Sequence record: NC_070882.1
Strand: one strand, 5' to 3'
DNA: 64,000 nucleotides
The notes under the pieces were generated by a model. It was not told the DNA's origin. It ran no database searches and saw nothing but the letters and a program-made list of their open reading frames with translations. This document shows positions 52,681 to 61,976 of the stretch, one piece after another (within the stretch, counting starts at the first letter, position 1; every line of letters starts with the position of its first letter). Both the position numbers and the translations under genes were made by a program.

Positions 52681-53217
52681 ATGATCAAGTTACTTGTAAT
52701 CCCCGAAGCAGTCTATGATCAGTACAAAGCTGATGGTGTGCAGTTTACTAAGCTACTCTGCCCCAACTATATAGCTTCCGTAAGCTCGGTAAATGACCTT
52801 GCGGAGATCGACGCTGCAATTAATGAATTCCCATTCCGGTTCTGTCAGGGAACTCAGATCGAGAAGGCTGACAGTCCGGTTGTTGGGATCGCCCTAAAGG
52901 CAACCTCCGACGACGATAATCAATTCAAGATGCAAGAATTGCACAATCGTGTAGAGGAACGTATTGCCAATATGGCTCTGCGTAAGGCAAATGATTCTGA
53001 TTATATCAGTGTTTATAGCCTTTATCCTGTAGATGAGTATCTTTGGGTTGCGGTGCAGAAGAGTCTGCACACTGGTTCAAGCGATCCTGACCGGCTCACA
53101 ATTAAGGCTAACCACACTTTCTTTGATAGTATGATTAGCGAGCTGACTAGAGCTTGCCCATTTGAGCAAGTAATGGCAACAAATCTCTTCACTTATTATC
53201 TGGAGTCACAAGGCTGA
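52681..53217 (+). CDS. Hypothetical protein (gp119-like)
   Basis: 178 aa between helicase and capsid genes; synteny. Confidence 0.7.
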   Translation: MIKLLVIPEAVYDQYKADGVQFTKLLCPNYIASVSSVNDLAEIDAAINEFPFRFCQGTQIEKADSPVVGIALKATSDDDNQFKMQELHNRVEERIANMALRKANDSDYISVYSLYPVDEYLWVAVQKSLHTGSSDPDRLTIKANHTFFDSMISELTRACPFEQVMATNLFTYYLESQG

Positions 53218-53288: not shown

Positions 53289-55514
53289 ATGAAAGACCTT
53301 AAATCTCTGTTCAAAGTGAACGGCGACCGCGACCTGACTCGTTTCTCCATGGAATCCTTCCTTGGTAAACTGGACCTGGAAAAAGACTACGGCGACAGCA
53401 TCCTGTCCGCTGGTAGCAAACTGATTAGTAAGATCGGTCTGGAAAACTTCGGCCAACTGAGCGACGAAGATGCTCAAAGTGCTGCTGGTATGTACGCTAG
53501 CCTGCAAAAAGTTGCCCGTCAGTGTGGCTTCGAATCCTTCGAAGGCGCTAACAGCCGTGTAGGCGAAAACCAACTGTCCGCTGCCACCATGGCTGCCCTG
53601 GCAATGTCCAACTCCACTGAGTACGTTAAGGCTCTGAAACAAGTTGGTAAGAAAATTGCTTCCACTGACAAGAACGTCATTTCGGTTGAACACCGTTTCG
53701 ACGGCCCGGCTGGTTCGATCCAAACTTTCGAAGCTGCTGCTGGCGTCGGTCTGGAAAACTACAACGAGAAATCCCAGCGTGACTTCCGCGTTGTGACCGT
53801 TGGTTATAACCTGGCCGCTTCCCGTCAGGATGAGTTCGCTGAGCGTATCTATCCGACCACCGTTATCAACCCGATTGAAGGTGGTGTTGTTCAGGTTCTT
53901 CCGTACATCGCGGTAATGAAAGACGTTTACCACGCTGTTTCCGGTCAGAAGCTCGACAACCAAGAAGTCAACATGGTTGAAGCCTATCGTGATCCGTCCA
54001 TCCTGGACGACGAGTGCACTGCACTGATCCCGGCTATCGATCCTGCTGGCACTAACCTGAAGTACTTCGCTGATCCGGCTCTGCTGCCTCCGGTAACCGT
54101 TATCAACGAACAAAACATGTCCATCGAAACTGCTCCGCTGAAGCCGGGCGTTAAACTGGACCTGATGGGTAACTCGAACGCCAACCTGCTGATCAACAAA
54201 GGCATGCTGGACATTTCGGATACCATCGATCCGTCGGGCCGCCTGAAGGCTCTGTACGTTAAGTTCCAAGGTAAAGTCATCAAGTTCCAAACTGAACGTC
54301 TGCCGCGCGCAGTGTTCCAGCCGGACCTGGTTGGTGATACCCGCGGTGCCAAGATCGACTTCTGGTCGGATGACCTGACTGTTTCGGCCGTAACCCGCAC
54401 TACTGACGCTGCACAAACTGCTGGCATGAAAGAACTGGAACAACGTAAGTGGGTTCTGCGTCTGAGCATGCAATTCAGTGGTCACATCAGCCTGAGCCGT
54501 GGCGATAGCCGTTTCACCATCGGTGAAGTAACTATCGATCGCATCCTGGACGAAGACAAGCGTCGCATCGACCTGGAAACTGGCGATGGTAAAGCTCTGG
54601 CCGACAGCATTGGCGAAATGGAAATCGTTGGTTTCGACCTCGACACCCGCTTCACCAACACTAACCGCCGTCAGCGTGGTCACCTGCTGCAAACTCGTGC
54701 CCTGCAATTCCGTCACCCGATTCCGATGCATGCTCCGGTTACCCTGCCGCTGAGCACCATGGACGAAGAAGGTCCGGGCGAAGTTGTTAAGGCTCTGACT
54801 GTCAACACCAACATCCGTAACAGCAACAACGCTGTTAAGCGCCTGCTGAACTACCTGGCTCAGCTGAAAGAAGTAACCGCTAACGGTTTCGACCGTCCGC
54901 AGTTCGGTGCTGTTGAAGGTGCTCTGTCCGCAGTAATGCGTCCGACCTACCGCTACAAGAAGCTGCACCTGCCTGACATGATCGACACCCTGAAGTCGCA
55001 AGACCGTTGGGAAGACGTCTGCTCGGCAATCCTGAACGCTGTTAAAGGTGTACTGTTCCCGGCTTACCGTGAATCCAACATCGAAGCAGCTTTCCGCGTG
55101 ATCTCCGGTAACCAAGACGAGCGTCCGATGTTCCTGTTCTGCTCGGACAAAGAGATCGCTAACTACCTGATGACCAAGGGCGACGATCGTACCCTGGGCG
55201 CTTACCTGGAATACGACCTGGTATCGACCAACAACGAACTGTTCGACGGTAAGCTGGTAGTGATTCCGACCCGTAAGACTCCGCAAGAGAACGACATCCT
55301 CAGCTTCGGTCAATTCTACTACGTATCGACCGTAATCGCCGACCTGCCGATCACCCGTGGTGGCCAGCAAGTTACTCGCGAAATCGCTGCGATTCCGTTC
55401 AACCTGCACGTTAACAACATCCCGTTCGCTCTCGAATTCGACGTTACTGGCTTCGAAGAAGTGATGGGTGAGTCTCAGTGGAACAAGCCCCTGGTTGAAG
55501 CCGTAAAAGGTTGA
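53289..55514 (+). CDS. Major capsid protein (phiKZ gp120-like)
   Basis: 741 aa; GLE/NYNEK maturation site; SRQDEFAE..YPT..INPIEGG; strong codon bias; adjacent to DnaB gene as in phiKZ. Confidence 0.95.
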   Translation: MKDLKSLFKVNGDRDLTRFSMESFLGKLDLEKDYGDSILSAGSKLISKIGLENFGQLSDEDAQSAAGMYASLQKVARQCGFESFEGANSRVGENQLSAATMAALAMSNSTEYVKALKQVGKKIASTDKNVISVEHRFDGPAGSIQTFEAAAGVGLENYNEKSQRDFRVVTVGYNLAASRQDEFAERIYPTTVINPIEGGVVQVLPYIAVMKDVYHAVSGQKLDNQEVNMVEAYRDPSILDDECTALIPAIDPAGTNLKYFADPALLPPVTVINEQNMSIETAPLKPGVKLDLMGNSNANLLINKGMLDISDTIDPSGRLKALYVKFQGKVIKFQTERLPRAVFQPDLVGDTRGAKIDFWSDDLTVSAVTRTTDAAQTAGMKELEQRKWVLRLSMQFSGHISLSRGDSRFTIGEVTIDRILDEDKRRIDLETGDGKALADSIGEMEIVGFDLDTRFTNTNRRQRGHLLQTRALQFRHPIPMHAPVTLPLSTMDEEGPGEVVKALTVNTNIRNSNNAVKRLLNYLAQLKEVTANGFDRPQFGAVEGALSAVMRPTYRYKKLHLPDMIDTLKSQDRWEDVCSAILNAVKGVLFPAYRESNIEAAFRVISGNQDERPMFLFCSDKEIANYLMTKGDDRTLGAYLEYDLVSTNNELFDGKLVVIPTRKTPQENDILSFGQFYYVSTVIADLPITRGGQQVTREIAAIPFNLHVNNIPFALEFDVTGFEEVMGESQWNKPLVEAVKG

Positions 55515-55598
55515 ACTGGAAAGGGTACCTTCCGTAAGCTTGAAAATGGTACTACCCGTTATCTTGAAGACGGAGTGGCCCGCCGCCTAGAGCGGTAA
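55515..55598 (+). other. In-frame 27-codon extension after capsid UGA (candidate readthrough product)
   Basis: TGKGTFRKLENGTTRYLEDGVARRLER-TAA with 8-aa RxLE(N/D)G periodicity; upstream of the terminator. Confidence 0.6.
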
Positions 55599-55630
55599 AG
55601 CGGAAGTGTTAAGCTGACTGCTGGCATAAC

Positions 55631-55654
55631 AGCCTCTACCTTCGGGTAGAGGCT
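55631..55654 (+). terminator. Capsid operon terminator
   Basis: AGCCTCTACC-TTCG-GGTAGAGGCT-TTATG. Confidence 0.9.
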
Positions 55655-55684
55655 TTATGTCGTCATTAAAAAATATTTCAAATC

Positions 55685-55692
55685 TATATTAC
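55685..55692 (+). promoter_or_regulatory. Early promoter TATATTAC
   Basis: TTTCAAatcTATATTAC upstream of SD GAGGA and ATG 55731. Confidence 0.7.
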
Positions 55693-55730
55693 GGTATTGA
55701 AGAATCATTCCCTAATTAGAGGATCAGACA

Positions 55731-56210
55731 ATGTTCTGGAATACACACGGGCATCATGTTGAGCAAGAGCTCACTGATTCCCAAATGAATCCTGGCGACA
55801 TTGTCGTCATGAAAGAAAATACTACGGTTAGTAATAATACGTCTAACCAAACCAATTCTCAAACCACCACTACTATTCATCCTACCCAGGATGAGAATAT
55901 GTCCCATTTTGCTAATCGCTTCGAGAAGCAAATAAGACATGTTAATATATCCAATGGCCGTTGTTATGAATCGGGAGGTACCCCTGAAGAAAAACAACGT
56001 TCGCGCAACACGCGGAAGGGTAAAGGTAAAACGCGTGTTGCGCATGGGAAACGTGGAGACAGAAATCATAGAGATTCGAAAGCATCCCAAACGAGTCGAT
56101 ATGAACCTAGTCAAGAACGGAGTAGGCCCAAAGGACGTAAAGTAGAAATGGTATTGGATAGGATTGTTTTAAATGGTAAAGATCAACCGTTCCCGTGCGG
56201 GTCATATTGA
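55731..56210 (+). CDS. Low-complexity basic hypothetical protein (gp121 position)
   Basis: 159 aa, SD GAGGA; N/T-rich then R/K/G-rich; an alternative-frame ORF is nested. Confidence 0.5.
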   Translation: MFWNTHGHHVEQELTDSQMNPGDIVVMKENTTVSNNTSNQTNSQTTTTIHPTQDENMSHFANRFEKQIRHVNISNGRCYESGGTPEEKQRSRNTRKGKGKTRVAHGKRGDRNHRDSKASQTSRYEPSQERSRPKGRKVEMVLDRIVLNGKDQPFPCGSY

Positions 56211-60976: not shown

Positions 60977-61387
60977 ATGCTGTCATTTGACAATGGAGTA
61001 GGTACAGAGTTCATAGCTTTGAATCGACTTCCTGAATACATGCGTACAGATTACGAAAGTTCCAAGTTCAGTAACGCTGTACGTGACGGTACTATTGCTT
61101 GTGAGTATGGACATCCAAAACTGACAGGCAACGCTGAAACAGATTACAAACGAGCCACGTCTATTAATTGCAATAACGGCGCTGCTTTAGTAATCGGTAT
61201 CGATCCAGTACACGAAAAGGCTAAACTCATCGGCTTCAATGTGTATATCCGTCCATTCGGTCCGTTCCATGATCGGATACACGCGATGATCAAAAAAGGT
61301 ATCCCAATGCGTCTGGGTGTCCGTGGTCTTAAGAACGCAGATGGTATCTTGAAAGAAATCATCACGTTCGATATTTTGTCCGATTGA
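60977..61387 (+). CDS. Prohead protease (T4 gp21/phiKZ gp175) fold paralog, predicted catalytically dead
   Basis: CEYGHP, AALVI, PFGP, IP..LGVRGL and TFD align with gp21 GELNHP, AAIII, HGP, IPGVSSRGL and VD. Confidence 0.6.
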   Translation: MLSFDNGVGTEFIALNRLPEYMRTDYESSKFSNAVRDGTIACEYGHPKLTGNAETDYKRATSINCNNGAALVIGIDPVHEKAKLIGFNVYIRPFGPFHDRIHAMIKKGIPMRLGVRGLKNADGILKEIITFDILSD

Positions 61388-61436: not shown

Positions 61437-61976
61437 ATGAAATTCGAAAAACTTCCGAATGCTAAGTTCCGTGTAACTATCTCTTTCGAAGAGATGCGCC
61501 AACGTATGGCAGAAGGTCTTCGTCGTGATCTAGCACTTCTGGGTAAAGAACGGGTTGAGGCTATTGTAGAACATGCTCGAACGTTGAGTCAGTTGTATCT
61601 CTGGGAAAACTCGTCTTTCGTTAAGAAGAATGAACTCCTGATGTCCGGTATGGAACTTGGTCACCCCAATGTAATCGTATCTTCGCCAGAGAATATGATT
61701 CTACGTGGCATGGTTATAGATGCTAACCGTGTGTGCGCCACTATCGATAACTGGCATATCCGTCAAGGTAACAGTATCGATACTTCACATGCATTGATCT
61801 TGGACATTACCTCCGCTGGTCCTCTGGCACGTGATATGAATGCCCTTTACGATCTCCTACCCTTGGCAGTGGGTTTCCGTTATCAGTTGAATGAACGTGA
61901 GCAAGTAGCTGATATCGTGGGTGTAGATATTCTCTATAAAGACGATTTCGATAACCCTGTATTTAAAGATAAATAA
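61437..61976 (+). CDS. Hypothetical protein
   Basis: 179 aa, SD AGGAG. Confidence 0.75.
   Translation: MKFEKLPNAKFRVTISFEEMRQRMAEGLRRDLALLGKERVEAIVEHARTLSQLYLWENSSFVKKNELLMSGMELGHPNVIVSSPENMILRGMVIDANRVCATIDNWHIRQGNSIDTSHALILDITSAGPLARDMNALYDLLPLAVGFRYQLNEREQVADIVGVDILYKDDFDNPVFKDK

What the first reader, a model, noticed from the sequence alone, without database searches (positions are those of the whole stretch)
55512..55598. Probable stop-codon readthrough of the major capsid protein adding an RxLE(N/D)G repeat tail
Seen: the capsid ORF ends GGT-TGA-A, whereas the neighbouring abundant head genes mostly end TAA. The same frame continues for 27 sense codons to TAA at 55596-98, before the terminator at 55631, and has no plausible start of its own. 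It encodes TGKGTF-RKLENGTT-RYLEDGVA-RRLER, an 8-residue periodic repeat whose first two-thirds use codons typical of the capsid gene, which is unlikely in a neutral 3' UTR. A hairpin GGAAAGG-GTA-CCTTCC (55518-33) starts 3 nt after the UGA, and CTTCCG (55529-34) can alternatively pair with CGGAAG (55601-06). Established: UGA is leaky; extended minor capsid forms exist (T7 10B by frameshift, Qbeta A1 by UGA readthrough); R/LxxEDG-type repeats are recalled from phage fibre and decoration proteins. Inference: a fraction of capsid subunits carry a docking tail for head fibres or decoration proteins. I know of no such recoding system described for nucleus-forming jumbo phages. Selenocysteine insertion via a SECIS-like hairpin is a less likely alternative.
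Basis: partly seen in the sequence, partly recalled or inferred. Interest (0 to 1): 0.9.

Follow-up and report, generated by a model that had tools for sequence, protein, structure and literature searches.

The report
Leaky stop extends jumbo-phage capsid protein
The major capsid gene of this phiKZ-like Pseudomonas jumbo phage ends in a UGA stop followed in frame by a 27-codon tail that evolves like a protein across dozens of relatives, so a minority of capsid subunits very probably carry an unannotated tail; no peptide has yet been detected.

Summary
The window is a Pawinskivirus (PS119XW/PA1C-like) genome. Its PhiKZ-type major capsid gene (53289-55511) ends TGA-A. Twenty-seven in-frame sense codons follow, then TAA, then a strong terminator.

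- **Distribution:** among 49 distinct capsid loci from phage genomes and metagenomes, all 31 ending in TGA have an in-frame extension. Of 18 ending in TAA, 17 have none. The two traits switch together about eight times on the capsid tree.
- **Coding signal:** all indels are whole codons. Invariant Arg, Glu, Gly and Leu positions are kept through synonymous codon changes, including CGN/AGR.
- **Relatives:** some carry an Ig-like (Big_2) domain between the stop and the same tail.
- **Excluded:** own start codon, conserved hairpin or SECIS, suppressor tRNA.
- **Second copy:** the tail matches, at E 2e-8 genome-wide, the C-terminal tail of the phiKZ gp143 family (DUF7941; virion protein and holin regulator).

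Best explanation: programmed UGA readthrough makes a minor extended capsid subunit that displays this tail on the outside. A docking role is inferred only. I found no report of this in the literature. Direct protein evidence is lacking.

The parts
52681..53217 (+). Upstream neighbour: homologue of phiKZ gp119, the vertex-binding minor capsid protein. Context only.
   Evidence: PF25619 E 2e-96, phrog_14501.
53289..55511 (+). Major capsid protein coding sequence (741 codons), PhiKZ gp120 family.
   Evidence: PF25620 E 8e-231; phrog_3231. PDB 8y6v gp120 E=0. 100% identical to PS119XW and HHBS36_1.
55512..55514 (+). In-frame UGA stop, followed by A: the proposed leaky (readthrough) codon.
   Evidence: TGA in 31 of 31 distinct relatives that have an in-frame extension. 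TAA in 17 of 18 that lack one. Next base A19/G6/C1; last sense codon is nearly always Ala, Pro or Gly.
55515..55532 (+). Extension linker, TGKGTF.
   Evidence: GKG or xPG conserved in most lineages; the length varies by whole codons only.
55533..55556 (+). Repeat 1, RKLENGTT.
   Evidence: R, E and G invariant in 9 lineages with 2-4 synonymous codons each.
55557..55580 (+). Repeat 2, RYLEDGVA.
   Evidence: R and G invariant, with CGT/CGG/CGA/AGA and four Gly codons.
55581..55595 (+). Terminal half-repeat, RRLER.
   Evidence: R and L invariant (CGC/CGG/AGG; CTA/TTA/CTG). The whole 27-residue piece matches a profile of gp143-family tails at E 2.4e-8; the next-best six-frame peptide scores E=1.
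55596..55598 (+). Second stop (TAA), ending the extended product.
   Evidence: A stop at the equivalent place in all relatives.
55626..55658 (+). Intrinsic terminator hairpin (GC stem, UUCG loop, then UUUAU). It places the extension inside the capsid mRNA.
   Evidence: dG -19.1, z -6.1. Same position with changed stem sequences in Phabio and phiKZ. The simple scan missed it because the T-run is short.

Best explanation
Programmed, low-level readthrough of the capsid gene's UGA stop.

1. Most ribosomes terminate at 55512-14 and make the 741-residue major capsid protein.
2. A minority decode UGA with a near-cognate host tRNA (by analogy, tRNA-Trp) and add 28 residues: one at the stop, then TGKGTF-RKLENGTT-RYLEDGVA-RRLER. 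They stop at TAA 55596-98, upstream of the terminator.
3. The extended subunits co-assemble into the T=27 shell. If readthrough is a few per cent, that is tens of copies among about 1,600. In phiKZ, the C-terminal arm of the pentamer subunits contacts the external decoration protein gp244, so the tail should project outward.
4. The tail is a small module of three short strands joined by E-(D/N)-G turns. The same module ends the DUF7941 protein gp143 (a virion protein and holin regulator). In some relatives it sits behind an Ig-like domain that is itself encoded after the capsid stop.
5. Its most likely role is as a surface handle that binds a phage partner, for example a DUF7941 N-terminal domain.

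Shown here: anatomy, conservation, the coupling of UGA to the extension, the absence of other decoding routes, and the homology to the gp143 tail. Inferred: the actual translation, its level, the residue inserted, outward display, and the binding partner.

The confidence of 0.8 is for translation of the tail by readthrough of the UGA. I put translation by any route at about 0.9 and the docking role at about 0.35.
For: - **Coding signal:** frame 0 is open in all relatives, while frames +1 and +2 carry stops. Indels are whole codons only.
- **Synonymous turnover:** seven residues are invariant in nine genera-level lineages with 2-4 synonymous codons each, including CGN/AGR Arg and CTN/TTA Leu switches.
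- **Stop and extension coupled:** 31 of 31 TGA loci have an extension and 17 of 18 TAA loci have none (Fisher 3e-12, uncorrected). There are about eight joint switches on the capsid tree. L089, L099 and L041 are TAA/no-tail loci nested in TGA/tail clades.
- **Longer variant:** L081 and L082 (two samples) and L039 carry 95 in-frame codons directly after the stop, an Ig-like domain plus the same tail. They have no shared start codon. Differences by codon position are 33/29/62, and the other frames hold 4-8 stops.
- **No constitutive fusion:** none of 120 database homologues carries the tail as part of the annotated protein.
- **Other routes absent:** seven phage tRNAs, none reading UGA; no conserved RNA structure or Rfam hit.
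- **Not a global recoding:** TGA ends 35% of window ORFs.
- **Match to the gp143 tail:** E 2.4e-8. The tandem motif occurs only twice in six frames of the ~300 kb genome.
- **C-terminus exposed:** the C-terminal arm of phiKZ penton subunits touches external gp244 (PMC11297242). C-terminally GFP-tagged Goslar capsid protein localised like capsids, as puncta around the phage nucleus and in the bouquets, in infected cells.
Against: - No peptide, ribosome-footprint or band evidence exists. Searches for the tryptic peptides in papers found nothing.
- Three structural papers on phiKZ and Goslar virions mention no extended capsid form.
- No stimulatory RNA element was found, so the efficiency is unknown and may be very low.
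- pN/pS over the whole tail is about 0.5, looser than the capsid C-terminus at about 0.25. Codon usage is not capsid-like.
- One relative (L039) has TAA before an apparently functional extension, which simple UGA leakiness does not explain.
- Tail and gp143-tail sequences do not co-vary within genomes, which gives no support to a shared co-evolving partner.
Confidence: 0.8

Rival explanations
1. The tail is translated, but passage of the UGA is driven by a dedicated factor rather than by passive near-cognate leakiness. Candidates are a phage or host change to release factor 2 or to tRNA late in infection, or an in-frame 'stop hop'. The extended form could then be abundant or timed.
For: - The UGA context is constrained beyond the stop. 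The last residue is Ala, Pro or Gly, the next base is a purine in 25 of 26 contexts, and GGG at +11 to +13 is invariant in 25-26 of 26, even across Lys (AAG) and Pro (CCG) codons.
- L039 has its extension behind TAA.
- The genome encodes tRNA-related enzymes: a QueC-like protein and an RNA ligase.
Against: - No suppressor, Trp or Sec tRNA is present in the genome.
- 35% of ORFs end in TGA and would be affected by any global change.
- Nothing identifies such a factor.
Confidence: 0.1
2. The 27 codons are a separate small gene. It would be translated by reinitiation just after the capsid stop, or from a non-canonical start, to give a free peptide of about 20-27 residues.
For: - In one clade (L034, L084, L085) an ATG sits two codons after the TGA, and gene callers annotate the Big_2 ORF as a separate gene.
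- GGAAAGGG after the stop resembles a ribosome-binding site.
Against: - There is no in-frame ATG, GTG or TTG before the repeats in the window, phiKZ, Phabio, D6, RVTF4, Noxifer or Viktualia.
- The 95-codon variants share no start, and their Ig-like domain begins at residue 2.
- A free ORF would not need to stay in the capsid frame in 31 of 31 loci, nor need UGA specifically.
Confidence: 0.05
3. Selenocysteine is inserted at the UGA, directed by a SECIS hairpin immediately downstream.
For: UGA is invariant, and a weak hairpin can be drawn 3 nt after it in the window. From general knowledge, the Pseudomonas hosts have selenoprotein machinery; this was not checked here.
Against: - The hairpin is no better than shuffled sequence (z 0.0) and is absent in phiKZ, D6 and Noxifer.
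- RNAalifold finds no conserved pair in 22 sequences.
- There is no Rfam match.
- The downstream sequence varies freely at synonymous sites, unlike a SECIS.
Confidence: 0.02
4. The region is not translated. It would be a conserved RNA or DNA element of the capsid 3' UTR, or a decaying remnant of an ancestral C-terminal tail.
For: It lies in a 3' UTR whose terminator and downstream motif are also conserved. Its codon usage is poor.
Against: - Arg CGN/AGR and Leu CTN/TTA switches preserve the amino acids, not the bases. Indels are whole codons only, and only frame 0 is open.
- There is no conserved structure.
- The peptide matches a real protein's C-terminus.
- A remnant would not keep UGA in 31 lineages and flip to UAA exactly when the tail is lost.
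Confidence: 0.03

Closest known systems
Q-beta A1 (readthrough) protein of ssRNA coliphages
   Same: A leaky UGA ends the coat gene. An in-frame extension is made in a few per cent of translations, and the extended form is a minor capsid component. This rests on established knowledge, not on a test here.
   Different: - The host of the system here is a 300 kb dsDNA jumbo phage with an HK97-fold capsid protein.
- The extension here is 27 residues (95-203 in relatives), not about 200.
- There is no sequence relationship.
- The function of the tail here is unknown.
Frameshift-derived extended major capsid proteins of dsDNA phages (T7 10B, T3, Lactobacillus A2, Listeria A118, A500 and PSA)
   Same: One capsid gene yields a major product and a minor C-terminally extended product. 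In T3, A2 and others the extension is an Ig-like domain (review PMC5009743). Relatives L039, L081 and L034 likewise add a Big_2 domain.
   Different: Here the extension is in the zero frame behind a stop codon, with no slippery site or frame change. The window's own extension is a short repeat tail, not an Ig-like domain.
C-terminal tail of the phiKZ gp143 family (DUF7941; 'virion structural protein', holin-specific lysis regulator)
   Same: Same module at the extreme C-terminus: two RxLE(D/N)Gxx units plus RxLE. Profile match E 2.4e-8.
   Different: - In gp143 the tail is constitutive, follows a DUF7941 globular part, and typically ends RELEH.
- The capsid tail ends RRLER or RYLE and is gated by a stop.
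- The two do not co-vary within genomes.
Ig-like (Big_2, Hoc-like) display domains on phage capsids
   Same: Surface display of an accessory module on a subset of capsid subunits. Big_2 is encoded after the capsid stop in relatives.
   Different: The window phage has no Ig-like domain in its extension.

Membership tests
Programmed stop-codon readthrough (Q-beta A1 type) | An in-frame ORF continues past a single stop of the upstream gene and has no start of its own. | tested here: met
Programmed stop-codon readthrough (Q-beta A1 type) | The extension is under protein-level purifying selection in relatives. | tested here: met
   Synonymous codon turnover at invariant residues, whole-codon indels and third-position excess.
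Programmed stop-codon readthrough (Q-beta A1 type) | The stop codon itself is conserved, and is of the leaky kind (UGA). | tested here: met
   31 of 31 loci with an extension have TGA; 17 of 18 TAA loci lack one; one exception, L039.
Programmed stop-codon readthrough (Q-beta A1 type) | The extended protein is detected, and its ratio to the normal product measured. | not testable with these tools
   No proteomic or ribosome-profiling data were at hand. Literature searches were empty.
Programmed stop-codon readthrough (Q-beta A1 type) | A stimulatory 3' context or RNA structure. Many cases have one, but not all. | tested here: inconclusive
   A purine follows UGA in 25 of 26 contexts and GGG at +11 to +13 is conserved. 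No conserved structure was found.
Selenoprotein gene (bacterial SECIS-directed UGA decoding) | A conserved SECIS stem-loop immediately 3' of the UGA. | tested here: not met
Frameshift-extended capsid proteins (T7 10B, T3, PSA type) | The extension lies in the -1 or +1 frame and is reached at a slippery site. | tested here: not met
   The extension is in frame 0 in all loci.
Stop-codon reassignment or phage suppressor tRNA | A tRNA reading UGA, and UGA used inside genes. | tested here: not met
   Seven tRNAs (Asp, Thr, Leu x2, Tyr, Met, Pro) in the whole genome. TGA terminates 21 of 60 window ORFs.
Ig-like (Big_2) capsid display extension | A Big_2 domain in the extension. | tested here: not met
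   None in the window's 27 residues. Present in relatives: L039 30.1 bits and L034 36.7 bits (gathering score 22.8); L081 19.5 bits, below threshold.
gp143/DUF7941-type C-terminal RxLE(D/N)G tail | Two 8-residue RxLE(D/N)Gxx units plus RxLE at the extreme C-terminus. | tested here: met
   Profile of 42 gp143-family tails: E 2.4e-8, next-best peptide E=1. The regex finds only these two sites in the genome.
gp143/DUF7941-type C-terminal RxLE(D/N)G tail | The tail binds a defined partner, for example a DUF7941 N-terminal domain in head-to-tail fashion. | not testable with these tools
   Only single-chain prediction was available. The gp143 tail is modelled at pLDDT about 80 as three bridged mini-strands. 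The head-to-tail model comes from a preprint.

The most novel reading that the evidence does not exclude
The readthrough tail is a capsid-borne copy of the gp143/DUF7941 tail, and it physically couples heads to the DUF7941 system. There are two possible forms:
- It seeds or anchors DUF7941 filaments, or gp143 itself, on the head surface. This would explain why gp143 is found in virions.
- It competes with gp143's own tail for a common site. Accumulating capsids would then tune the holin regulator and so the timing of lysis.

In related phages the same stop-gated slot has been used to display Ig-like domains. The capsid stop codon would then be a general, evolvable 'dosage valve' for surface modules in chimalliviruses.
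Probability: 0.15. Interest if true: 0.9.

Novelty: new variant of a known kind. Interest (0 to 1): 0.8.

Why it matters
phiKZ and its relatives are the main models for nucleus-forming jumbo phages, and their capsids have been solved to near-atomic resolution. An extended capsid subunit encoded in every one of these genomes appears to have gone unannotated.

If the tail is made, several things follow:
- It adds a new virion component, perhaps tens of copies per head.
- It gives dsDNA phages a case of coat-protein stop-codon readthrough; I know of no other, but did not search for one. Until now this was the textbook property of Q-beta, while dsDNA phages were known to use frameshifting.
- It links the head to the newly described DUF7941 family and to a lysis regulator.

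It also matters in practice:
- Annotation pipelines miss the extension, or call spurious overlapping ORFs in its place.
- Proteomic databases lack it.
- The natural stop-gated C-terminal slot shows where this capsid tolerates displayed modules.

Tried and rejected
rejected. z is 0.0 for the hairpin and -0.4 for the 105-nt region, with no conserved pairs.
- **SECIS or any Rfam family:** none found.
- **Suppressor tRNA:** the whole PS119XW genome was read in separate pieces and none was found.
- **Constitutively fused tails among 120 capsid homologues:** none.
- **Co-variation of capsid tail and gp143 tail within 17 genomes:** none. Mean score 46.8 for the same genome against 49.5 across genomes.
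- **Codon-usage argument:** only weakly supportive.
- **Whole-tail pN/pS:** moderate, about 0.5. The decisive signal is at the motif columns.
- **The motif elsewhere in the window:** none.
- **Literature on capsid-protein readthrough, ribosome profiling or the tail's tryptic peptides:** nothing found.
- **DUF7941 among the window ORFs downstream of the capsid gene:** no Pfam hit.
- **Enrichment of the conserved TCTATATTAC in the window:** none.
- **Structure prediction of the tail itself:** not possible. It has 27 residues, below the tool's minimum, and a protein read through the stop was not to be submitted. All searches used the pieces separately.

Full report
**What is there.** The window is a Pawinskivirus genome. 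Bases 55000-55800 are 100% identical to Pseudomonas phages PS119XW, HHBS36_1 and phiLBG22, and 99.4-99.9% identical to BRkr, phiHQ and PA1C. ORF 53289-55514 encodes a 741-residue PhiKZ-type major capsid protein (PF25620, E 8e-231; phrog_3231; PDB 8y6v gp120). It ends GGT TGA A. The same frame continues for 27 sense codons (TGKGTF, RKLENGTT, RYLEDGVA, RRLER) to TAA at 55596-98. A strong terminator hairpin follows at 55626-55658 (dG -19.1, z -6.1), so the extension lies inside the capsid mRNA.

**Comparative evidence for translation.** I aligned the region with phiKZ, Phabio, HPP-Temi and PA1C. I then read the capsid stop and its in-frame continuation in D6, RVTF4, Noxifer, Viktualia, PhiPA3 and 201phi2-1.
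- All nine lineages end the capsid gene in TGA, down to 63% capsid identity. All continue in frame for 26-30 codons with the same pattern: a short linker, two RxxE(D/N)Gxx units, then RxLE and a stop.
- Frames +1 and +2 contain stops in most lineages. All length differences are whole codons.
- In the codon alignment, seven residues are invariant in all nine lineages while their codons vary. Arg appears as CGT, CGG, CGA, CGC, AGG and AGA. Gly uses all four codons, Glu uses GAA and GAG, and Leu uses CTA, TTA and CTG.
- Changes that cross between CGN and AGR, or CTN and TTA, preserve the amino acid and not the bases. That is the signature of a translated sequence.
- Whole-tail pN/pS is about 0.5, against about 0.25 for the last 100 capsid codons. 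The tail is constrained mainly at the motif positions.

**Wider sampling.** A protein search found 120 capsid homologues (53-100% identity). None has the motif fused to its annotated C-terminus. Loci from IMG/VR, public metagenomes and Logan assemblies brought the set to 49 distinct capsid loci.
- Twenty-eight have TGA plus the short tail.
- Two have TGA plus a 203-codon in-frame ORF with a Big_2 domain.
- One has TGA plus 95 codons (an Ig-like domain, then QRFLEDGSFRALENGLPRLLES).
- One (L039) has the same 95-codon architecture behind TAA.
- Seventeen have TAA and nothing.
- Every TGA locus therefore has an extension, and 17 of 18 TAA loci have none (Fisher 3e-12, uncorrected for phylogeny).
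- On a neighbour-joining tree of the capsid C-terminus, each trait changes about eight times, and they change together. L089, L099 and L041 are TAA/no-tail loci nested in TGA/tail clades. L034 and L084 are TGA/Big_2 loci nested in a TAA clade.
- When the extension is lost the stop becomes the efficient UAA. Wherever the extension is kept the stop is the leaky UGA.

**The 95-codon variant.** This variant gives an independent and longer test. L081 and L039 differ at 43% of bases, with 33, 29 and 62 differences at codon positions 1, 2 and 3. Frame 0 is open, while the other frames carry 4-8 stops. The two share no in-frame start codon, and the Ig-like domain begins at residue 2 after the stop.

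**How the stop is passed.**
- No start codon of its own precedes the repeats in most lineages.
- There is no conserved RNA structure. RNAalifold predicts zero pairs in 22 sequences. The window's 105-nt region folds no better than shuffles (z -0.4). There is no Rfam match.
- Selenocysteine insertion and structure-stimulated readthrough are therefore unsupported.
- I read the rest of the PS119XW genome in separate pieces. It has seven tRNAs (Asp, Thr, two Leu, Tyr, Met, Pro) and none that reads UGA.
- TGA ends 21 of 60 window ORFs, so UGA is an ordinary stop in this phage.
- What remains is near-cognate decoding of a UGA in a permissive context. The next base is A or G in 25 of 26 contexts. The last residue is Ala, Pro or Gly. 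GGG at +11 to +13 is nearly invariant. Whether that GGG acts at the RNA level is open.

**What the tail is.**
- A tblastn search with the 27 residues found a second site in phiKZ-like, Phabio and Noxifer genomes. That site is the extreme C-terminus of the phiKZ gp143 family.
- Sixty-nine of 77 family members match the motif in their last 36 residues, and three Arg are invariant in an alignment of 42 of them.
- A profile of these tails was searched against all 10,820 six-frame peptides of the PS119XW genome. It scores the gp143 homologue at E 4e-12, the capsid extension at E 2.4e-8, and nothing else below E=1. The tandem motif occurs only at these two places.
- gp143 is annotated as a virion structural protein. 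It was recently described as a holin-specific lysis regulator (PMC12894885) and is non-essential by transposon sequencing.
- gp143 is one of three phiKZ DUF7941 proteins. DUF7941 is a chimallivirus-specific family proposed to form head-to-tail filaments at the peripheral baseplate, with the segment after the N-terminal domain docking on the next protomer (preprint).
- My AlphaFold2 model of the PS119XW homologue (pLDDT 86.6) resembles the phiKZ outer-baseplate chain 9xqd_0 (E 5e-7) and many jumbo-phage tail-fibre N-terminal domains. Its tail is modelled at pLDDT about 80 as three short bridged strands flanking each Arg.
- gp143-type tails also occur in phages whose capsid gene lacks the extension. 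The capsid tail therefore looks like the derived copy.

**Where it would sit.** In the phiKZ capsid structure, the C-terminal arm of pentamer subunits reaches the external decoration protein gp244 (PMC11297242). C-terminally GFP-tagged Goslar capsid protein localised like capsids, as puncta around the phage nucleus and in the bouquets, in infected cells. Distant homologues end in acidic, Gly-, Thr- and Pro-rich linkers before the stop. All of this fits outward display of whatever follows the stop.

**Function.** The docking-handle idea is the best available. It has a concrete candidate partner class, the DUF7941 N-terminal domains. It is still inference. Capsid tails and gp143 tails do not co-vary within 17 genomes, and each class keeps its own ending (RRLER or RYLE, against RELEH).

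**What is known.** I found no report of capsid-protein readthrough in phiKZ-like phages. The closest precedents are Q-beta A1 (UGA readthrough of a coat gene) and the frameshift-derived extended capsid proteins of T7, T3, A2, A118, A500 and PSA, some of which carry Ig-like domains (PMC5009743). This is a new variant of that known kind. It is zero-frame UGA readthrough in a dsDNA jumbo-phage capsid gene, conserved across many genera, and it appends a DUF7941-type tail.

**Limits.**
- There is no direct protein or ribosome evidence.
- The efficiency and the inserted residue are unknown.
- L039's TAA is unexplained.
- In the L034 clade an ATG two codons after the stop allows separate initiation.

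Noticed in passing
window 55683-55692: TCTATATTAC lies between the capsid terminator and the next gene. It is invariant in the window phage, PA1C, HPP-Temi, Phabio and phiKZ while its flanks diverge. It is possibly a phage-polymerase promoter for the gp121-like gene. It is not enriched elsewhere in the window.
   Followed up: partly
L003:1969-2112 (HPP-Temi) and L012:2978-3076 (Viktualia): Public annotations call small 'hypothetical protein' ORFs that overlap the capsid stop and extension in another frame. They are most likely spurious calls prompted by the unannotated coding signal.
   Followed up: partly
L034:3466-4074; L084 and L085:3775-4380: In one metagenomic clade the capsid TGA is followed in frame by a 203-codon Big_2 ORF with an ATG at its third codon. 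Either readthrough or separate initiation is possible. This ORF has no RxLEDG tail.
   Followed up: partly
L039:3454-3741: This is the only locus where a conserved in-frame extension (Big_2 plus tail) follows TAA rather than TGA. It could be UAA readthrough, a different host, or an assembly variant. It is unexplained.
   Followed up: partly
P0049-P0120 (capsid homologues): Many distant capsid homologues end in long acidic, Gly-, Thr- and Pro-rich low-complexity linkers, very often with Pro as the last residue before the stop.
   Followed up: no
P0030, P0038-P0040: JGI names several of these capsid homologues 'virulence-associated protein VapD'. This looks like an annotation error, since they are PF25620 capsid proteins.
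   Followed up: no
L059-L062, L066, L067, L072, L073, L076: Many gp143-family genes also end in TGA directly after their RELEHx tail. Whether anything conserved follows was not examined.
   Followed up: no
window 60977-61384 and 61437-61973: Two adjacent small ORFs give weak, sub-threshold matches to Peptidase_S80 (20.8 and 18.1 bits; cut-off 23.4). They are possibly paralogous fragments related to the prohead protease fold.
   Followed up: no
window 52681-53217: The gp119 homologue just upstream also ends TGA-A, with 12 in-frame codons before the next stop. No motif was seen, and conservation was not tested.
   Followed up: no
L057:12701-20932 (PS119XW record 288301-296532, outside the window): All seven phage tRNAs (Asp, Thr, Leu-TAG, Tyr, Met, Pro, Leu-TAA) lie scattered within one ~8 kb region. 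RefSeq marks the Leu-TAG one as a pseudo-tRNA, while ARAGORN calls it intact.
   Followed up: partly
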